DNA from: Octopus bimaculoides
Lineage: Eukaryota
Assembly (NCBI RefSeq): GCF_001194135.2
Contig: NC_068985.1
Span: 69,860,068 to 69,917,530, forward strand
DNA length: 57,463 nt
Reading direction: 5' to 3'
Below the pieces are notes generated by a model that saw only the letters and a list, made by a program, of their open reading frames with translations, searched no databases and was not told where the DNA came from. Position 1 is the stretch's first letter. Each line of letters opens with the position of its first letter. Shown here one piece after another: positions 1,070 through 52,907 of this stretch. The translations under genes were made by a program, and so were the position numbers.

Positions 1070-1391
1070 GGGTAAGCGGTAATGACCCCCTTCGATCATG
1101 AATAACCATGGGATTGCACCTAGAAAGTTACATTCTGAGGCAAGATTATTTATGAAGACTAGCAGTCGTGCATGCATAACAGCCTCCCCTCTCTACGTCA
1201 CTGAAGGAAAGGAAAATAACGATACAACTTGGCACCAGTGACGTCGCACCTCATTTCTACAACTGAGTGAACTGGGACAATGTGATATACAGTATTTCAC
1301 TCAAGAACAAAACACACCAGGTCAGAGAAACGAATTCACTACATCATGATTGTGAGCCCAGCGCTTTAACCATTGAGCCATGCGCCTTCAC
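1070..1391 (-). mobile_element. tRNA-derived CORE-type SINE
   Basis: The minus strand reads a tRNA-like head (A box TGGCTCAATGG, degenerate B box), then a CORE-like GTTCTTGAGTGAAATAC...CCAGTTCACTCAGTTGTAGAAATG segment. Homologous to 6585-6921 and 30355-30485. Confidence 0.85.
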
Positions 1392-2374: not shown

Positions 2375-4722
2375 GATGTCCATTATTTATCGAGTATGAC
2401 TCCAGTCAGCTTATATTAAATTTAATATATGCTATAAATTTATTTTGTTCTTGTTGCTTAGTTGCATGTCAAATCTGATCGAATAAACGTAGACTCAACG
2501 ACGATCCAACCACAGCCATCACATGTAGTTTTGATTTAAATGACACAATTTGCCTTTATGTCATAGTTTTACTTTTGTTTTTGTTTTTGTATTTGCCTTT
2601 TGTGAATTGAAGTTAGTTTACCGCTGTGCTTGCAGTTCGAATGACCGCTTAGAAACATCAATGTTGGTTCATATTTGTAGTCTAATGTTGTAGTTACACT
2701 AAAGTTTCATCTAGGAGGGAAACATTGATTATAATTTCATTAATATTCAATGCTTCATTAAATAGGATATAATGATTTGTTTATATATAATGTGCAGTTG
2801 GCAGCTAGTTCAAGTAATTTATTCATGCTATAGAAACCGTGTTTACGTACTATACTGTACAATGTAATATATCTAGAGTTTAAACAAAACAAACAGATGT
2901 AAGCAACTTATAGTTTTTATGCACTATCTTTGTTGACAATACAAAAAAAAATAAACAATGTTACCATTTTCATTCACATGTAGGGATTTCAAGATCGAAC
3001 GATTACCCTGACGGAGACACCGCTTACAAATTTGTTATCACTAAAGATTGATGTGTACCCGAGAAACTCATTTGCATATATGATGAATTTTAGGCAAATT
3101 AATGAAAATTGTTCGCACGTTCGTCCAATAGATTTATTTAACCTACTTGTTACGATGGTGATCTATTAGCAGTGTCGCCATCGACAGTTAAAACGAGTAA
3201 GCAAGTACTAAAGAGTCCGCAAGATAAAACTAAGGCTAATTCGGATGATCCTGCTTTCTACTGTCCACTGACATCATTTATATAAAGGCAAAGTTTTTAA
3301 CCAACTCTGGTTTAATGAATGTCAAATGAAATGTCCAATTATATTTATATTTTGTTGTGCAGTAGTGAACTGAAAAAATCATTCTTTACATACCATTTAT
3401 TTATGTGTTGCATAGTAGATTTTTGTTTATAATACAAACCTCGTTGCAAAACAGTATGGGACACGACGTACCTGACTAATAAACCCAATGATACAGTATT
3501 TCTGGGGGAAACGTTCAAGCACAATCAGTGCAACTACTATCTAGGGAGTCACATTAAGTTGTTTCTACCTTATAGAGCGATGTATTTAAAGGATGCTGAA
3601 CTTCTACAAGTTTTGAGAAACAAAATGTTCATGCAATAAATTCTTCTAATCAGGATTCCTTTCTATTGTAACTTGTATGGGAAAGTAATTGAAACAGTAT
3701 TTACTAGTACACAAAAGCAAAATTTATGCCAATGTATACAGTCCAAAGAAACAGACAATGATACGAAGAAGATAAATATCAATGTGACGTAATGAAAGTG
3801 TTTGAGGCTGATATAATACCGGTGCGATACTATTAAACAGAAACGATGTAAATTGTCTACAGAAAAATGTTATTTCATTTTATTGAGTTAATATTTACAT
3901 TGTTAGAACATCCATTGGTTTTGTTTATCTAAACTGCCCCGAGATACTATTTCGGAAACATGAACATGTAGAGAAAATCAATATCTTATCCTATAATATA
4001 CGCAATACCATCACAATATACACCATAAATATGTTTGGGGTGAGTGACACACGTTTCTAGTGGCATGAAAAAGTGAGGGAAAGTAGGATGGAATAGATAA
4101 TTTCAAGTAAATATCTCACCATAATACAGCATAGACTTACTCCCAACTATGTTAGCAAAGAATTTGAAAAGAGTTTTCTTCGTAGATATACATTTTCATT
4201 CAAACGCACTGCTGAGAATGCAAGGATTGGCTAAGATTTCGGAATGGTATACGGAATTTTGAGAAAGCCAAGTTAAAATTTAAATTTTGGAACTAATAAA
4301 TATATATTTTATCTGCAACTTATATAATGCTAGGTAACACTAAGAATTAAAATTTTAAATACTTTACTGATGCATTTACCCAATAACGCTGTATCTGAGA
4401 GGGGTTCATTAACTGAACTAAAATACAAGTTCAGTTTAAAAACAATGGATACTAAATGGTTAGAAAAGTAACCAATTGATTCATTGGCAAAATATTTATG
4501 AGTCTGACATACCGTACGTTAAGAGGGATACATTACATTAAATGAAGAAAATTATATGGGTTTTCACTTTTTCCTTCGATGATTCGTTTTAATTCGGCTG
4601 TTCCACTGAGCTTCGAGTACAAGTGATATTAACTGTCTGTTATTGCTGGAGCATTATAAATAGATAATACATTAATGAAATATTAATATTTACCACTCTT
4701 CATTTTGGTATCAGAGAGACCA

Positions 4723-6138: not shown

Positions 6139-6524
6139 ACCCAATAAAATTCGAAAATAGATTAAGGTTGTTCATCATTTTTGTTTTCAGTCTGCGGAGA
6201 AATAACGAAAACTTGCCCTGTTTATAATTATACCATATGTTACATATTTCTTATATCATACCTTGATACTTATATCATACCTTGGTATTTATAGAGTATT
6301 AAACACTTTCGGTATGCATATTAGGGACTCTTTCATAGAGTAACTGCTGCATTTGTTGAGCATATAAACTATTTGGCTGCTTGTATCTCTGGAGACTGTC
6401 AGAATGAGGTAGACGCCTCTGATGAGAACCCAATAAGTTTCGAAAATCGATTAAGGCTGTTCAACATTTTTTCAGTCTGCTGAGAAATAACTAAAGTTTG
6501 CCTTGTTTATAATTATACCATGCG

Positions 6525-41445: not shown

Positions 41446-41924
41446 ATATATGCATATATATATATAACATTTATATTGTTTGATTGAACGTCACGCATCT
41501 ATATCCAGGTAAGCTTGCCTTAATCTCTTTGATGCGACTCTATACTGTTTTCTCCCCCATTGTTTTCTCTCTCATCCTTTTCTAACTCCTGTTTTTCCTC
41601 CCCATCACCGTCTTCTATCTGTCTCACTCTCTCTCTCTCTCGCTTCTTTCCTCTTTCTCGCTCTCGTTGCTTNNNNNNNNNNTATATATATATATATATA
41701 TATGCATATATATATATAACATTTATATTGTTTGATTGAACGTCACGCATCTATATCCAGGTAAGCTTGCCTTAATCTCTTTGATGCGACTCTATACTGT
41801 TTTCTCCCCCATTGTTTTCTCTCTCATCCTTTTCTAACTCCTGTTTTTCCTCCCCATCACCGTCTTCTATCTGTCTCACTCTCTCTCTCTCTCGCTTCTT
41901 TCCTCTTTCTCGCTCTCGTTGCTT
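41446..41924. other. Exact about 206-bp duplication across a 10-N gap (probable scaffolding artefact)
   Basis: 41446-41652 is identical to about 41698-41924, either side of N41653-41662. Confidence 0.8.
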
Positions 41925-42199
41925 ACACGTAACTATCGTCCATCATTCTTTTCTTCACGCGATCATCTTTTCTTTCGGGACTGTCTTAAGGACTAGCTGT
42001 ATCCTATCTCTACCTTCTATCTTTTGTCTTTTCAAAGAGAATATTTCTCCAGCGTTTGCTATTTTACCCTCGTTCTGGTCCATGTTTGTTTTCGTTCGGT
42101 TTCCTTGTGTCTTCACTGTTCTGTATTTGTTCCAAACTTTGATCCTCCATAAATCCCAAATTTTATTTTGGTACTTATGGGAGGAATTGTCTTCGAAGA

Positions 42200-42265
42200 C
42201 TCATATTGTCGTTCACTGCTCGAAATGAGAAGTAGATAGACAGCCGACAACTGATGAAGGGCCGT
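42200..42265 (+). ncRNA. Candidate hammerhead ribozyme with non-canonical (permuted) strand order
   Basis: CTCAT-A^TTGTCG (42200-42211), GCTC-GAAA-TGAG (42218-42229), CGACAA-CTGATGA-A-GGGC (42245-42262). Helix I is 6/6 and helix III 5/5 Watson-Crick; helix II is 4 bp with one extra A. Confidence 0.6.
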
Positions 42266-42394
42266 TCTTTATGTTACTTGTCCTGTTTTCCATTTGTTTC
42301 TCTCGTTGTTTGCGTATTGAAATCATTTGTTTTCTTATTTCATGTTGTTTCATGTTACTGACGTCCAGTACACATATATGCATATGTATGTTTG

Positions 42395-42445
<51 letters not shown>

Positions 42446-42449
42446 CGAG

Positions 42450-42489
<40 letters not shown>

Positions 42490-43006
42490 CGGAATTCCGA
42501 TTCAGACAAGGAAAGAGGTTAACAATTAAACCAACTTCATTTGCGCTTCCGAGATAATTTATGTTATAATTTTTCAGCTTGTGAACATAGCTATATAGAA
42601 CGGACAAGTATGGCACTTAGACAGATAACCACACTACATAAGGAACAGATCCATTTCCCACAGTACAGATAAATTACTTTGAGCAAACACATGGAGAGAT
42701 GTACAGGTAATATCCAACAGTTTTCCACGTCTATCAGAGCAAAGAAACAATTTCTGTACCAGAACATTTTGATAAAATAAAGATTATTTATCTAAAAATA
42801 CAGAACAAGCCTAAATATAACTTGCATAATCAACTTTGGTCTTAGTATATATTTCACCTCACTACTTTAGCTTTTGAGTTTTTGTATATTTATTTATCCC
42901 TTCCCCCAAAATACACAATTACCTCCCCTGTCCTGAATAATAACGATTACCAATTACATCCTCTTAGATTTTTCGATTTTTCTACTTGTTGATTCATTCA
43001 AAAACT

Positions 43007-43110
43007 CCCATACACAGCATGAACTAAAGTTTTCTTAAGAAAATACATAATTACTATAATTGCAATGTATGTAAACTATGCAAACTGTATGCAGTTTCGT
43101 TCTTTTGCTA

Positions 43111-43145
<35 letters not shown>

Positions 43146-43275
43146 NNNNNNNNNNCCCATACACAGCATGAACTAAAGTTTTCTTAAGAAAATACATAAT
43201 TACTATAATTGCAATGTATGTAAACTATGCAAACTGTATGCAGTTTCGTTCTTTTGCTATATATGTATATATATA
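43007..43275. other. Exact about 119-bp duplication across a 10-N gap (probable scaffolding artefact)
   Basis: 43007-43125 is repeated at 43156-43275, either side of N43146-43155. Confidence 0.8.
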
Positions 43276-44535
43276 CTGGGTGCGTAAGGTATTTGAGGAC
43301 ATACCTTTTTGAGTAATCGGTGCCTTTTTTTTTTGCTAACACTGTATATCATCTTTGTTTCAGAAAATAATAATGGCAGACCTGCAGATGACTCCAGAAA
43401 TGAAGGGGCATGCTGTTATTATGGTTGTAAAGGATGAGCATACCAATTTAGAAATATCTCGATTTTTAAAATTTGCCAGATCATTCGTTTCCAAAGTCTG
43501 TAAGGAGCTAGATAATGAAGATGGAAATATATCACCAGTATCAAAACATAAAACGCATTCTAAACGTTTTCAAATCATCAGAACACCTGAATGTATCCAA
43601 CAAGTTCAACTGACCGTTGATTGCAATCCTAGAAAATTCATGAGATCAATTGCAAAAGATCTCTAGTTGTCAGAAGGAACAGTCAGAAATGTCGTCTGCG
43701 AAGACATAAAATATAAGTCTTATATGATGATGAACGGTAAATTTGTCAGAAACACACAAAAGAAAATCACTACATCAGATCTGAAAGGCTCTTAAACGAA
43801 CTCAAAAATGCAGCAGGTAAAATGATTTGTTTTTTTCTCAAACGAGAGAAAAACATCGATGAAGATCAACAAATTAACAGAAGAAATGACAGATAGTTAT
43901 GTGCAGACCCTTCTGAAGTCCCAAGTGTTTTATGCATACAAAATTTCCTGAAACTGTCATGTCTTTAGGGGCTGTCAGCAATGAAGGACATGTGATACCT
44001 CTTAACGTCTTTCTACAAGGCTACATACATTGAGGTCCCGGAAATAATTGTTAAGCCCTCGATAGACAGTGTATGCAATGGAAGGCCATATGTGTTTCAG
44101 TAAGACTCTGCACTATCACACATGGCTCTTGTAACACAGGAATAGTTGGCCGAAAATATTCATGATCACATAACGCCTAACATTTGGCCTCCTAATGCTC
44201 CAGATCGCAATACATTGCACTATTACATGTGGAGCGCTGTTCAGAGGGAGGTCATTGAACACGCCCATAACACCAAAGATTATTTGAAAGCTGCTATAGT
44301 TACAGTAACGTCAAACATGAGCTAGGATCACTTGATTCGAACATATACATGATTTAGATGCCGTATGGAAGCAGTTGCTGAAGCTGAAGGTGGCTTTATT
44401 GCATAAAATTATAGAAAAGAAGGTTTATTTTTATCATTATAGCAGTTTTTGTTAAATTAATTTATTATCTGTTATTATATTTCTGTTTTGTTTTTTATAA
44501 ACATAAATCTGCCCTCTAACATCTTACGCACCCTA
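43276..44535 (+). mobile_element. Full-length but inactive maT/DD37D (Tc1-mariner superfamily) transposon
   Basis: Imperfect TIRs GGGTGCGTAAGGTATTTGAGGAC / GGGTGCGTAAGATGTTAGAGGGC. ORF 43355..43666 is followed by FSNEK, PYVFQ*DSA and WPPNAPDRNTLHYY; there are 37 residues from the second D to the third catalytic position (now CAC, His). Confidence 0.88.
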
Positions 44536-46179: not shown

Positions 46180-47477
46180 TTGTAGGCGGTAGAGGGGCAA
46201 GTATATGACGTCCAATATCGTCGTGGGACGTTGGACAGAAGGTCCGGTTAAAATGCTAGGGATCTGGTTTGGTCCGGATCTACTGGTAGAGAAGAATTGG
46301 AGTGTCCCTTTTCCGCGTTTTGTGGAGAGGTGTACCACTTGTAAGGCGCTCTATCTGCTGCCAAAAGCCGTTAAAGGGTAGGATAGGAATGCCGTGGCTG
46401 AAGATGCGCAAGTTTGCGCTAAGGCCTAGGCACTTCAGGCTCTATTGGCTAGAGAATAGGTGTGATCACCGCTCGTGAAGTTTTTCTTACTGCAATTAAC
46501 CTTTCTTCGGCAGTTAAGTCCTTGAATCAAGCGGATACTCAGACTGAGTGATTGGCAGCTAGATTGCCAACAGGCACTCATGCTATTCTCACGGACGGGC
46601 AATATCGGCAGCTGACTTCTATAGCTGGTCGATAGAGTTCATGTCAGACGATGTCCTGGGGGAGATTCTGAGCTTCGATAGAAATCAGTTAACCAACTTG
46701 TTCGAAAGAACTTTCGGGTCGGGGTATCTGGATAATTACCAGAAAACCCTGACCTGGTTGGGTTATCGATCCGCCTTACCTATTCGAGAGAGGTTGTCAA
46801 GACACGATTGTGCCATCTCACCGACGTGTTTAGGATGCGAGCGGGACAGTGAAACTGTCCTACACGCCTTCGTACAGTGTGAGGAAATTAGGGAATTTAT
46901 AACCTATATCGAGCAGCTGTTATCAACGACAGAAAGAGTACAGCTATCAGCTGAATTTATTTTTAAGTTTGTGCCGTTCTCCTCCCTGAACAGGTAAAGA
47001 TGGCTCTTTCCTCTGCGTAGTGGTCATGCTCAAAGAGACAGTGTGGATAACACGTGTGAAAGGGATCGCAACAGGTACCTTCATCTCCACCCTAGAGAGG
47101 TTAGTTATTTTAACTACCACCTCCAAATAAAATCCTGCTTGAGAGGAGATACCTGTCGCATAGAACGTTTGATAAAAGATGGACGACAGCAGTAAGTAAG
47201 TAGCGGATGAATAGAAATAGCTAAATGCAGCCATCCGGCGATAAAAGGGAATACGTCGGATAACGGCGGTGGGTCAATTAACTCAGTTATATATTTGATA
47301 GGAATTTTTAATTATTTATCGATTTTCTCTGTAACTTTTGAAATATATTAATTCGATTTCAATATATTTGTTATTTTCATTGTAATCATTTCATTGTAAT
47401 CACACTGTTTACGTCCACTTGTCCGACATTGTAATCTCCCTTCTGTGTTGGGCCCTGTTTGGCCAATAAAAGAAATC
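46180..47477 (+). mobile_element. L1/Tx1-clade LINE 3' fragment (RT C-terminus, zf-RVT-like Cys/His motif, 3' UTR)
   Basis: GPVKMLGIWFGPDLLVEKNW, FRVLWRGVPLVRRSICC...GMPWL, and ORF 46641..46997 KTLTWLGYRSALPIRERL...PTCLGC...ETVLHAFVQC. Ends ...GGCCAATAAAAGAAATC. Confidence 0.82.
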
Positions 47478-52469: not shown

Positions 52470-52907
52470 ATCATTTAGTGGTTGCCCAGTCCTGGCTAAG
52501 AAGGAATATATTCACAGACACGACAGAGCTGGGACCTATATACACTGGAAGCTATGCCAACACTATGGAATAACAACAGAAAAAAGATGGTATAAACACA
52601 CGCCAGAAAAGGTCACAGAAAACGAGAAAGCAACCATACTCTAGGATATGCCAATACACACAGATAGAGAAATTAAGGTAAATAGACCAGATATAGTTGT
52701 CAAAGATCATGAAGAAAAAAATGCTTTCTAATTGATATATCAATACCAGCAGATGACAACGTTTCTCGAAAAGAAATGGAAAAACTTTCAAAATACGAAG
52801 ACCTGGAAATAGAGATAACTCGAATGTGGAGTCTAAAAACAGAAACAATTCCTATCATAGTAGGTGCCTTAGGTATAATAAAAAAATATTCAATCAAATA
52901 CATAACA
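52470..52907 (+). mobile_element. Second R4/Dong-clade LINE 3' fragment, running into a gap
   Basis: SGCPVLAKKEYIHRHDR...HWKLC...WYKHTPE, NRPDIVVKD...LIDISIP, KLSKYEDL...IPIIVGALG. Confidence 0.9.

What the first reader, a model, noticed from the sequence alone, without database searches (positions are those of the whole stretch)
42200..42265. Hammerhead ribozyme with a strand order that is none of types I, II or III (candidate double-pseudoknot hammerhead)
SEEN: strand A = CTCAT-A^TTGTCG (42200-42211; AUA cleavage triplet, cut after 42205). Strand C = GCTC-GAAA-TGAG (42218-42229). Strand B = CGACAA-CTGATGA-(A)GGGC (42245-42262). Helix III (ATGAG/CTCAT) is 5/5 and helix I (TTGTCG/CGACAA) is 6/6 Watson-Crick, each in exact register with the invariant core (A15.1-U16.1, H17, C3UGANGA9). 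Helix II is GGGC/GCUC plus G-C and U-A beyond one mismatch, but needs one extra A after A9. KNOWN: natural hammerheads of types I, II and III are circular permutations of the order A->B->C. INFERENCE: here the order is A->C->B, which no circular permutation, and no circularisation of the RNA, converts to the canonical order. A monomer would be doubly pseudoknotted, with a 3-6-nt linker joining the distal ends of helices I and II (which lie side by side in the active fold) and a 15-nt linker from helix III to helix I. Eleven in-register pairs on one strand are very unlikely by chance. Descriptor searches written for types I-III would miss this arrangement. I know of no description of it but could not search the literature.
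Basis: partly seen in the sequence, partly recalled or inferred. Interest (0 to 1): 0.92.

Follow-up and report, generated by a model that had tools for sequence, protein, structure and literature searches.

The report
Probable chance type-SGC hammerhead look-alike
The sequence really does carry every hammerhead-ribozyme core base in an order that types I-III cannot give, but that order was published in 2023 as the "type-SGC" hammerhead. This lone copy in junk-like animal DNA is about as good as a match that chance produces a few times per large genome.

Summary
The letters and coordinates are exact: site strand 42200-42211, GAAA strand 42218-42229 and CUGAUGA strand 42245-42262. Helices I, II and III have 6, 4 and 5 pairs in register with the core.

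The claim of an undescribed strand order is wrong. A->C->B is the "type SGC" non-circular permutation of Eckert, Friedrich, Weinberg and Weinberg (NAR 2023, PMC10085705). They report 583 natural examples, all from metatranscriptomes, with cleavage and disrupt/rescue shown in vitro.

The candidate fits that blueprint well. It shares the family's extra base after A9. It also has a possible fourth helix (42236-42244 with 42264-42272) in the family's position, though a very weak one.

Nothing shows that it is a selected ribozyme. I found no second copy and could retrieve no homologue. It lies in no recognisable repeat, has no Rfam hit, and scores E = 0.45 against a model of the main type-SGC family. 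Its fold is no more stable than shuffled sequence.

Simulation gives about 0.4 equally good four-helix matches per Gb per strand. That is roughly 4e-5 to 2e-4 per window, and a few per 2.5-Gb genome.

Verdict: a known architecture, and this instance is most likely fortuitous. P(selected ribozyme) is about 0.07; P(detectable cleavage in vitro) is about 0.3.

The parts
42200..42204 (+). Helix III, 3' strand (16.5-16.1), CTCAT
   Evidence: Pairs 5/5 Watson-Crick with 42225-42229. Duplex energy -3.1 kcal/mol.
42205..42205 (+). H17 = A. Predicted scissile bond lies between 42205 and 42206.
   Evidence: Position follows U16.1 and precedes helix I. The cleavage itself is inferred, not shown.
42206..42211 (+). 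Helix I, strand 1.1-1.6, TTGTCG
   Evidence: Pairs 6/6 Watson-Crick with 42245-42250. Energy -5.4 kcal/mol. In the minimum-energy nested fold it pairs instead with GACAG 42239-42243.
42212..42217 (+). Linker from the distal end of helix I to the distal end of helix II, TTCACT (6 nt)
   Evidence: In published type-SGC ribozymes this linker is typically 3 nt. I read it as 2-4 nt in the family alignment rows.
42218..42221 (+). Helix II, strand 11.4-11.1, GCTC
   Evidence: Pairs with GGGC 42259-42262: G-C, G.U, G-C, C-G. Energy -2.9 kcal/mol, against -7.1 and -4.8 in SGC-1 and SGC-3.
42222..42224 (+). Core G12 A13 A14
42225..42229 (+). Helix III, 5' strand (A15.1 to 15.5), ATGAG
42230..42235 (+). 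Unpaired spacer after helix III, AAGTAG
   Evidence: The published consensus allows 0-44 nt here.
42236..42244 (+). Candidate fourth helix, 5' strand, ATAGACAGC, directly 5' of the helix I strand
   Evidence: 8 of 9 positions pair with 42264-42272, with one CxC mismatch and two G.U. Only -0.9 kcal/mol as a duplex. The stretch reads like a degenerate GATA repeat (my reading of the sequence).
42245..42250 (+). Helix I, strand 2.6-2.1, CGACAA
   Evidence: In the 261-nt fold it pairs instead with TTGTC downstream at about 42279-42283.
42251..42257 (+). Core C3 U4 G5 A6 U7 G8 A9, CTGATGA
   Evidence: One of 27 CTGANGA sites on the two strands of the window.
42258..42258 (+). Extra A between A9 and G10.1
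   Evidence: Nearly all HRIMA-1 rows and SGC-3 carry an extra base (U) at this position.
42259..42262 (+). Helix II, strand 10.1-10.4, GGGC
42263..42263 (+). One-base spacer (C) between helix II and the fourth helix
   Evidence: The family has a 1-3-nt spacer here.
42264..42272 (+). Candidate fourth helix, 3' strand, GTTCTTTAT
   Evidence: A pairing this good in any of 12 registers occurs at 2.7% (Markov), 4.5% (real window) or 1.6% (local) of random positions.

Best explanation
Positions 42200-42272 (+) are a fortuitous, unselected match to the already published type-SGC (non-circularly permuted) hammerhead architecture. The stretch is solitary and lies between microsatellites in non-coding DNA of a draft animal genome.

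It carries all invariant core bases and four helices in the right register. If the + strand were transcribed, it could in principle fold into the doubly pseudoknotted hammerhead core. It would then cut slowly between A42205 and U42206 by ordinary hammerhead chemistry: attack by the 2'-OH of residue 17, leaving a 2',3'-cyclic phosphate and a 5'-OH.

No evidence indicates that it does this in the organism or was selected to do so. The sequence match is shown. Any folding or cleavage is inferred.
For: 1. The architecture is known, so no new fold needs to be invoked.
2. Chance is adequate at genome scale.
- I used a compact four-helix SGC descriptor: linker up to 8 nt, 0-1 inserted base, helices I/II/III and the fourth helix of at least 4/3/4/4 pairs.
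- It gives 11 hits per Gb per strand, and 0.365 per Gb per strand at the candidate's total of 23 pairs (137 Gb-equivalents).
- That is about 4e-5 per window and about 2 per 2.5-Gb genome, and more if real sequence is 2-3 times richer than Markov sequence, as searches suggest.
- With the two cores held fixed, the probability is 2/150,000, whether the rest is shuffled by local or by homogeneous composition. With about 15 core pairs per window this gives about 2e-4.
- With decoy cores on the real window, one decoy reached 22 pairs in about 850 window-equivalents.
3. No second copy of 41930-42365 exists in the window. No homologue was retrievable through ORF look-ups or exact DNA scans.
4. There is no Rfam hit. 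A covariance model of the HRIMA-1 family gives only 11.8 bits, E = 0.45.
5. Helix II (-2.9 kcal/mol) and the fourth helix (-0.9) are far weaker than in validated SGC-1 and SGC-3 (-7.1/-4.8 and -6.5/-6.5). The fourth helix is required in SGC-3.
6. The nested folds are no more stable than shuffles (z = +0.52 and -0.94), and they use the helix I and core strands in other pairings.
7. All known rearranged hammerheads come from metatranscriptomes, on contigs that also carry hairpin ribozymes. An RNAMotif/DARN search of all RefSeq yielded no covariation-supported example from a genome.
8. The locus is not inside a recognisable mobile element of the kinds that carry animal hammerheads.
Against: 1. 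The match is good.
- It has 23 pairs in four helices, the same number I count by hand in validated SGC-1 and SGC-3 (sequences).
- All core positions are canonical.
- G10.1-C11.1 is present.
- An extra base follows A9.
- A fourth helix starts 0 nt before the helix I strand and 1 nt after helix II.
3. Only about 12% of chance SGC-order hits have so short a helix I to helix II linker.
4. At the scale of this one window the chance probability is only about 1e-4. If few windows were scanned, chance is not a comfortable explanation.
5. Local base composition does not make the helices cheap.
6. Comparative data, the decisive evidence, could not be obtained either way.
Confidence: 0.8

Rival explanations
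1. It is a genuine, selected type-SGC hammerhead encoded in an animal genome. It would be an independently evolved or divergent member of the known permuted class, cutting its transcript at 42205/42206.
For: It satisfies the full type-SGC blueprint: block order, all core bases, an extra base after A9, three helices in register, a short I-to-II linker, and a fourth helix in the family's position. Its pair count equals that of validated SGC-1 and SGC-3 (my count). It is the top hit of the HRIMA-1 model in the window. The window-level chance is about 1e-4.
Against: - It is a single copy with no homologue found.
- The model score is not significant, E = 0.45.
- Helix II and the fourth helix are weak.
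- The linker is 6 nt rather than the typical 3 nt.
- Competing nested folds exist.
- No DNA-encoded type-SGC example is known, despite a search of all RefSeq.
- There is no second ribozyme and no repeat context that would give the cleavage a purpose.
- A few equally good chance matches are expected per large genome.
Confidence: 0.07
2. It is unselected but catalytically competent. The RNA self-cleaves detectably in vitro, as the singleton GCS-1 did, yet has no biological role.
For: All core bases and helices are in register. The paper's lone type-GCS sequence had no covariation support and still cleaved at 0.014 per min. [quoted passage not shown]
Against: The fourth helix is nearly unstable (-0.9 kcal/mol) and helix II has only 4 pairs. 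Disrupting the fourth helix abolished cleavage of SGC-3. Alternative pairings of the helix I and core strands compete.
Confidence: 0.25
3. It works only between molecules, as a strand-swapped dimer or in trans. The site strand of one transcript would dock on the GAAA-linker-CUGAUGA part of another.
For: Strands C and B joined by the 15-nt linker form a circularly permuted Haseloff-Gerlach-type enzyme whose two arms match strand A (my inference). The 6-nt cis linker is longer than in the family.
Against: Published type-SGC ribozymes act in cis with even shorter linkers. The arms are short (5 and 6 pairs), so dimers would need high RNA concentrations. Nothing in the sequence favours a dimer.
Confidence: 0.03
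4. It is a rearranged relic of a canonical hammerhead-bearing repeat (retrozyme, Penelope-like element or satellite), with the three blocks shuffled by deletion or recombination.
For: Animal genomes carry many repeat-borne hammerheads (general knowledge; context). The paper considers rearrangement as one possible origin of permuted forms.
Against: The window has no canonical hammerhead and no repeat or mobile element at the locus. Getting S-G-C from tandem C-G-S units needs several precise deletions that preserve the helix registers.
Confidence: 0.03

Closest known systems
Type-SGC hammerhead ribozymes: the HRIMA-1 motif and type-SGC variants (Eckert, Friedrich, Weinberg and Weinberg, Nucleic Acids Res 2023, PMC10085705)
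   Same: - Identical block order (site, GAAA, CUGAnGA) and two core pseudoknots.
- All invariant hammerhead bases.
- One extra base between A9 and G10.1.
- A short linker from helix I to helix II.
- A helix between the stretch 5' of the helix I strand and the stretch 1 nt after helix II.
- Similar overall size, about 73 nt.
   Different: - Helix I is UUGUCG/CGACAA, not the invariant AUGUU/AACAU of HRIMA-1.
- The extra base is A, not U.
- Helix II has 4 pairs including a G.U, instead of 5 GC-rich pairs.
- The linker is 6 nt, not the typical 3 nt.
- The fourth helix is AU/GU-rich with a mismatch.
- It is DNA-encoded in an animal genome rather than on a metatranscriptomic RNA contig with a hairpin ribozyme.
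- It is a single sequence without covariation or cleavage data.
- The family model gives E = 0.45.
GCS-1, the lone type-GCS hammerhead candidate of Caballeronia peredens (same paper)
   Same: A singleton genomic sequence with all expected hammerhead features in a non-circular order and no covariation support. The authors judged its biological significance unclear.
   Different: A different block order (G-C-S). GCS-1 was shown to cleave in vitro (0.014 per min). The present sequence is untested.
Canonical hammerheads of types I, II and III (Rfam hammerhead families)
   Same: The same catalytic core bases, the same three helices and the same predicted cleavage site rule (after H17, 3' of U16.1).
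   Different: Their three helices form a nested three-way junction closed by hairpin loops. Here no two strands that pair are joined by a hairpin loop, all helices cross, and no Rfam model matches.
Hammerheads with an inserted base after A9, e.g. the chrysanthemum chlorotic mottle viroid plus-strand hammerhead (recalled from memory, not checked here)
   Same: One extra base between A9 and helix II is tolerated by the core.
   Different: Those are canonical type III ribozymes of viroids.

Membership tests
Type-SGC hammerhead (architecture, Eckert et al. 2023) | Block order 5'-Site, GAAA, CUGAnGA-3' (a non-circular permutation) | tested here: met
   Site 42200-42211, GAAA block 42218-42229, CUGAUGA block 42245-42262. 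Definition.
Type-SGC hammerhead (architecture, Eckert et al. 2023) | All invariant core bases: C3 U4 G5 A6 N7 G8 A9, G12 A13 A14, A15.1-U16.1, and H17 not G | tested here: met
   CTGATGA 42251-42257. GAA 42222-42224. A42225 pairs with T42204. H17 = A42205.
Type-SGC hammerhead (architecture, Eckert et al. 2023) | Helices I, II and III abut the core blocks with at most 1-2 inserted bases | tested here: met
   6, 4 and 5 contiguous pairs, with one inserted A at 42258. The 1-2-base tolerance is stated.
Type-SGC hammerhead (architecture, Eckert et al. 2023) | Extra base between A9 and G10.1 (seen in nearly all HRIMA-1 rows and in SGC-1 and SGC-3) | tested here: met
   The family has CUGAnGA-U-G. 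The candidate has CUGAUGA-A-G. The base differs (A, not U).
Type-SGC hammerhead (architecture, Eckert et al. 2023) | Short linker from helix I to helix II, typically 3 nt | tested here: inconclusive
   6 nt (42212-42217), or 3 nt if helix II is extended across a C x U mismatch. That extension competes with the fourth helix. About 12% of chance SGC-order hits have a linker of 6 nt or less.
Type-SGC hammerhead (architecture, Eckert et al. 2023) | Fourth helix joining the other sides of helices I and II; required for cleavage in SGC-3 | tested here: inconclusive
   42236-42244 pairs with 42264-42272 at 8 of 9 positions in the family's register (0 nt and 1 nt spacers). It has one mismatch and two G.U, and only -0.9 kcal/mol against -6.5 in SGC-1 and SGC-3. 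The requirement is shown.
Type-SGC hammerhead (architecture, Eckert et al. 2023) | Covariation in the helices among homologues (the authors' acceptance criterion) | not testable with these tools
   No homologue was found in the window, through ORF look-ups or in metagenome and viral scans. No eukaryotic genome collection was available.
Type-SGC hammerhead (architecture, Eckert et al. 2023) | Site-specific self-cleavage that is abolished by mutating the first conserved G of CUGAnGA | not testable with these tools
   This needs in vitro transcription. Criterion.
Type-SGC hammerhead (architecture, Eckert et al. 2023) | Context: RNA (metatranscriptome) contigs that also carry hairpin ribozymes, presumed circular RNA replicons | tested here: not met
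   The window is draft eukaryotic DNA with N gaps, microsatellites and retroelement fragments. No ribozyme family reaches the Rfam threshold. The published context is described.
HRIMA-1 motif (the homologous family within type SGC) | Invariant helix I AUGUU/AACAU | tested here: not met
   18 of 18 sampled family rows have it. The candidate has UUGUCG/CGACAA.
HRIMA-1 motif (the homologous family within type SGC) | Significant score against a covariance model of the family | tested here: not met
   Model R1 was built from 18 published rows. It contains helix III and the fourth helix, because pseudoknots cannot be modelled. The candidate is the best hit in the window, but at 11.8 bits and E = 0.45.
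Canonical hammerhead types I, II and III | Nested three-way junction, with strand order a circular permutation of CUGAnGA, GAAA, site | tested here: not met
   The order is site, GAAA, CUGAnGA. All three helices cross. No Rfam hammerhead match appears even at E up to 10.

The most novel reading that the evidence does not exclude
This is the first DNA-encoded type-SGC (non-circularly permuted) hammerhead in an animal genome. It would be an independent origin of the doubly pseudoknotted form, outside the metatranscriptomic RNA contigs (which also carry hairpin ribozymes) where all known examples were found.
Probability: 0.07. Interest if true: 0.6.

Novelty: not a real feature. Interest (0 to 1): 0.2.

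Why it matters
If it were real, the permuted, pseudoknotted hammerhead would no longer be confined to one group of environmental RNA contigs. It would also arise in cellular genomes. That would strengthen the idea that the hammerhead core is reinvented easily in any connectivity, and it would argue for re-scanning animal genomes with all six block orders.

As things stand, the value is mainly cautionary.
- The arrangement is already published.
- Single descriptor matches of this quality are expected by chance in Gb-sized genomes.
- The authors of the class accepted only candidates with covariation, for exactly this reason.

Tried and rejected
- Rfam on the whole window at gathering thresholds, and on 41700-42800 and 42150-42320 at E up to 10: nothing hammerhead-like. 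The only hits were microsatellite artefacts that resemble mir-297 and similar families.
- Looking for a canonical hammerhead hidden in the same bases: no GAAA follows a helix II hairpin after 42257, no CTCAT follows 42229, and no CUGANGA lies between 42211 and 42222 (reading). Rejected.
- Self-BLAST of 41700-42800 and 41930-42365 against the window: only microsatellites and a duplication flanking an assembly gap.
- Inverted-repeat search for mobile-element ends around the locus: only TA repeats.
- Fetching other copies through ORFs that overlap or flank the motif: four exact look-ups and one homology search found nothing. A search with the LINE-fragment ORF gave a single 65%-identical Logan protein. 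The source species is therefore essentially absent from the protein collection, and the organism could not be named.
- Exact-pattern scans for the candidate in metagenome and viral contigs: 0 hits.
- A scan of metagenome contigs for HRIMA-1 (helix I plus cores), meant to fetch natural examples: 120 loci, but none was a full HRIMA-1 ribozyme. I therefore took family sequences from the paper's supplement instead.
- The idea that the fourth helix and helices I and III are cheap because a purine-rich island sits in pyrimidine-rich flanks: rejected. Compartment-preserving shuffles and homogeneous shuffles give the same probability.
- The idea that the motif lies in the 5' part of the LINE whose zf-RVT domain is at 46641-46997: rejected. 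RT-like ORF pieces start only at about 46190.
- Literature searches for later work on permuted hammerheads, or for hammerheads in cephalopods: nothing beyond the 2023 paper and papers citing it.

Full report
**Observation.**
- Site strand: CTCAT-A-TTGTCG, 42200-42211.
- Linker: 6 nt.
- GAAA strand: GCTC-GAAA-TGAG, 42218-42229.
- Spacer: 15 nt.
- CUGAUGA strand: CGACAA-CTGATGA-A-GGGC, 42245-42262.
- Helix I has 6 Watson-Crick pairs and helix III has 5, including A15.1-U16.1.
- Helix II has 4 pairs (G-C, G.U, G-C, C-G) once one extra A after A9 is allowed.
- All invariant hammerhead bases are present, and H17 is A.
- The three helices cross one another, so the order site, GAAA, CUGAUGA cannot be reached by circular permutation of types I-III.
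- In keeping with that, Rfam 15 finds nothing in the whole window at gathering thresholds, and nothing hammerhead-like around the locus even at E up to 10.

- They divide the hammerhead into blocks S (site), G (GAAA) and C (CUGAnGA). Types I, II and III become CGS, GSC and SCG.
- Cleavage occurs at the predicted site and is lost in a core G mutant.
- Disrupt/rescue experiments cover helices I, II and III and a fourth helix that ties the other sides of helices I and II together.
- Rates were 0.007-0.19 per min.
- The linker from helix I to helix II is 'typically three nucleotides'.
- All their rearranged ribozymes come from assembled metatranscriptomes.
- They searched all RefSeq and their metagenomes with RNAMotif/DARN descriptors, expected false positives, and kept only candidates with covariation.
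- No later paper on this class, and none on hammerheads in cephalopods, turned up.

**How well the candidate fits the class.** I rebuilt SGC-1 and SGC-3 from the oligonucleotides in Supplementary Table 1 and read the HRIMA-1 alignment in the supplement.
- Nearly every family member has CUGAnGA-U-G, an extra base between A9 and G10.1. The candidate's extra A sits in the same place.
- In the family, the fourth helix is formed by the bases directly 5' of the helix I strand and the bases 1-3 nt after helix II.
- In the candidate the same register gives 42236-42244 (AUAGACAGC) against 42264-42272 (GUUCUUUAU). That is 8 of 9 positions paired, with one CxC mismatch and two G.U.
- I checked my reading of the family's four-helix pseudoknotted structure on 18 published rows. 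89.6% of cells are paired, helices II and III and the fourth helix covary, and helix I is invariant.
- By my hand count, the candidate's four helices hold 23 pairs, the same number as in SGC-1 and SGC-3.

**Where it differs.**
- Helix I has a different sequence from the invariant AUGUU/AACAU of HRIMA-1.
- The linker is 6 nt.
- Helix II is shorter and weaker: -2.9 kcal/mol against -7.1 and -4.8.
- The fourth helix is barely stable as a duplex: -0.9 kcal/mol against -6.5.
- A covariance model of HRIMA-1 (helix III plus the fourth helix, since pseudoknots cannot be modelled) puts the candidate first in the window, but at 11.8 bits and E = 0.45, which is not significant.

**Chance.**
- Three-helix test at the candidate's stringency: 5 hits in 420 Mb of first-order Markov sequence over all six orders, about 1.3e-3 per window, and one sixth of that per order.
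- Decoy cores of the same composition on the real window give 3.5-4.7e-3 per window. Real sequence is therefore some 2-3 times richer than Markov sequence.
- To avoid setting thresholds after the fact, I scored a compact four-helix SGC descriptor by total pairs. It allowed a linker up to 8 nt, 0-1 inserted base, at least 4/3/4 pairs in helices I/II/III, and a fourth helix of at least 4 pairs with at most one mismatch.
- Over 137 Gb-equivalents this gives 11 hits per Gb per strand, and 0.365 per Gb per strand at 23 pairs or more.
- That is about 4e-5 per window and about 2 per 2.5-Gb genome, or roughly 5 with the real-sequence factor.
- Holding the two cores fixed and shuffling the rest gives 2 in 150,000. 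The result is the same whether local compartment composition or window composition is used, so local composition does not explain the match. With about 15 core pairs per window this is about 2e-4.
- On the real window with decoy cores (about 850 window-equivalents), only the candidate reaches 23 pairs and one decoy reaches 22.
- The motif is therefore unlikely in one given window, but a few equally good ones are expected somewhere in any genome of this size. I do not know how many windows the first stage read.

**Independent evidence for function.** None could be obtained.
- The window contains no second copy of 41930-42365.
- ORFs that overlap or flank the motif are not on record and have no homologues.
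- Exact scans of metagenome and viral contigs found nothing.
- No eukaryotic genome collection was available, so orthologues and paralogues could not be examined.
- The locus lies between an assembly-gap duplication with a TA repeat upstream and (TA)n(ATAG)n downstream.
- The neighbourhood shows only a 5'-truncated LINE fragment at 46193-46994 (zf-RVT, E = 2e-9) and ORF pieces at 43340-44322 that look transposase-like by eye only. The motif is in neither.
- Nested folding of 86 nt and 261 nt around it is no better than shuffles (z = +0.52 and -0.94).
- Those folds use the helix I strand (with GACAG 42239-42243), the core and helix II strand (with the palindromic flank 42190-42195), and the CGACAA strand (with TTGTC at about 42279-42283) in competing pairings.
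- The 5' strand of the fourth helix reads like a decayed GATA repeat (my reading).

**Weighing.**
- The chance rate for a match this good is about 4e-5 to 2e-4 per window.
- A real rate of that size would need several true type-SGC ribozymes per genome.
- No DNA-encoded example has been reported from any genome, despite a descriptor search of all RefSeq.
- Known animal hammerheads sit in repeats or conserved introns, and neither is evident here.
- I therefore put about 0.8 on a fortuitous, unselected motif and about 0.07 on a genuine selected type-SGC ribozyme.
- Separately, I put about 0.25-0.3 on detectable self-cleavage in vitro, whatever the biological role. The core is complete, and the authors' own singleton GCS-1 cleaved without any evolutionary support.
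- If the RNA does cleave, the mechanism is ordinary hammerhead transesterification between A42205 and U42206. This is inferred.

**Verdict.** The kind is already known (type-SGC hammerhead). This instance is most likely not a real functional feature, and if it were real it would be a new member of a known kind. The decisive tests are comparative (copies and orthologues with covariation, genome-wide enrichment over shuffles) and biochemical (cleavage at 42205/42206 that is sensitive to the G5 mutation).

Noticed in passing
window 41448-41672 and 41700-41924, either side of the 10-N gap 41673-41682: Two 225-bp stretches, 100% identical, 252 bp apart, flank a 10-N gap (TRF reports period 252 at 100% match). 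This is most likely a gap-closure or scaffolding duplication rather than a biological tandem repeat.
   Followed up: partly
window about 43023-43145 and 43172-43309, either side of the 10-N gap 43146-43155: The same translated stretch (TKVFLRKYIITIIAMYVNYANCMQFRSFAIYVYIYI) appears on both sides of the gap. This suggests a second assembly duplication artefact.
   Followed up: no
window 6415-6457 (+): A hammerhead-like motif in type I order: GCCT-CTGATGA-GAA...TTC-GAAA, then the zero-loop palindrome AATCGATT where helix III should be, then A-AGGC. Helix I has 4 pairs and helix II has 3. The palindrome could pair only between two molecules. There is no Rfam support. About 0.15 motifs of this loose quality are expected per window by chance.
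   Followed up: partly
window 46193-46994 (+): A 5'-truncated non-LTR retrotransposon fragment. The ORF pieces contain an LGIWFG-type RT tail and a zf-RVT domain (PF13966, E = 2e-9). The protein collection holds only one homologue, a Logan protein at 65% identity. The source species is therefore barely represented there, and the organism could not be named.
   Followed up: partly
window 43340-43663 and 44146-44322 (+): ORF pieces that look by eye like the N- and C-terminal ends of a Tc1/mariner-type transposase (for example WPPNAPDRNTLHYYMW). Pfam gave no supporting hit, so this stays a guess.
   Followed up: partly
window 42366-42448: Weak matches to mir-297, mir-1277, mir-3149 and mir-466 (all far below gathering scores) are artefacts of the (TG/TA)n microsatellite.
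   Followed up: yes
L098 about 2770-2850 (+) and L075 about 1110-1190 (+), metagenome contigs: Two related metagenome contigs carry an SGC-order motif: CATCTT-T^ATGTT-tag-GATG-GAAA-GGATG-tttgtgt-AACAT-CTGATGA-a-TATC. It has a 3-nt linker and an extra A after A9. Helix I and the cores were forced by my search pattern. No fourth helix is visible, and L075 has G in place of U16.1, so it is probably a chance match.
   Followed up: no
window 52776-52907 (+): An ORF start, MEKLSKYEDLEIEITRMWSLKTETIPIIVGALGIIKK, runs into an N gap. It looks like a retroelement-derived peptide (from memory). Pfam gave no hit.
   Followed up: no
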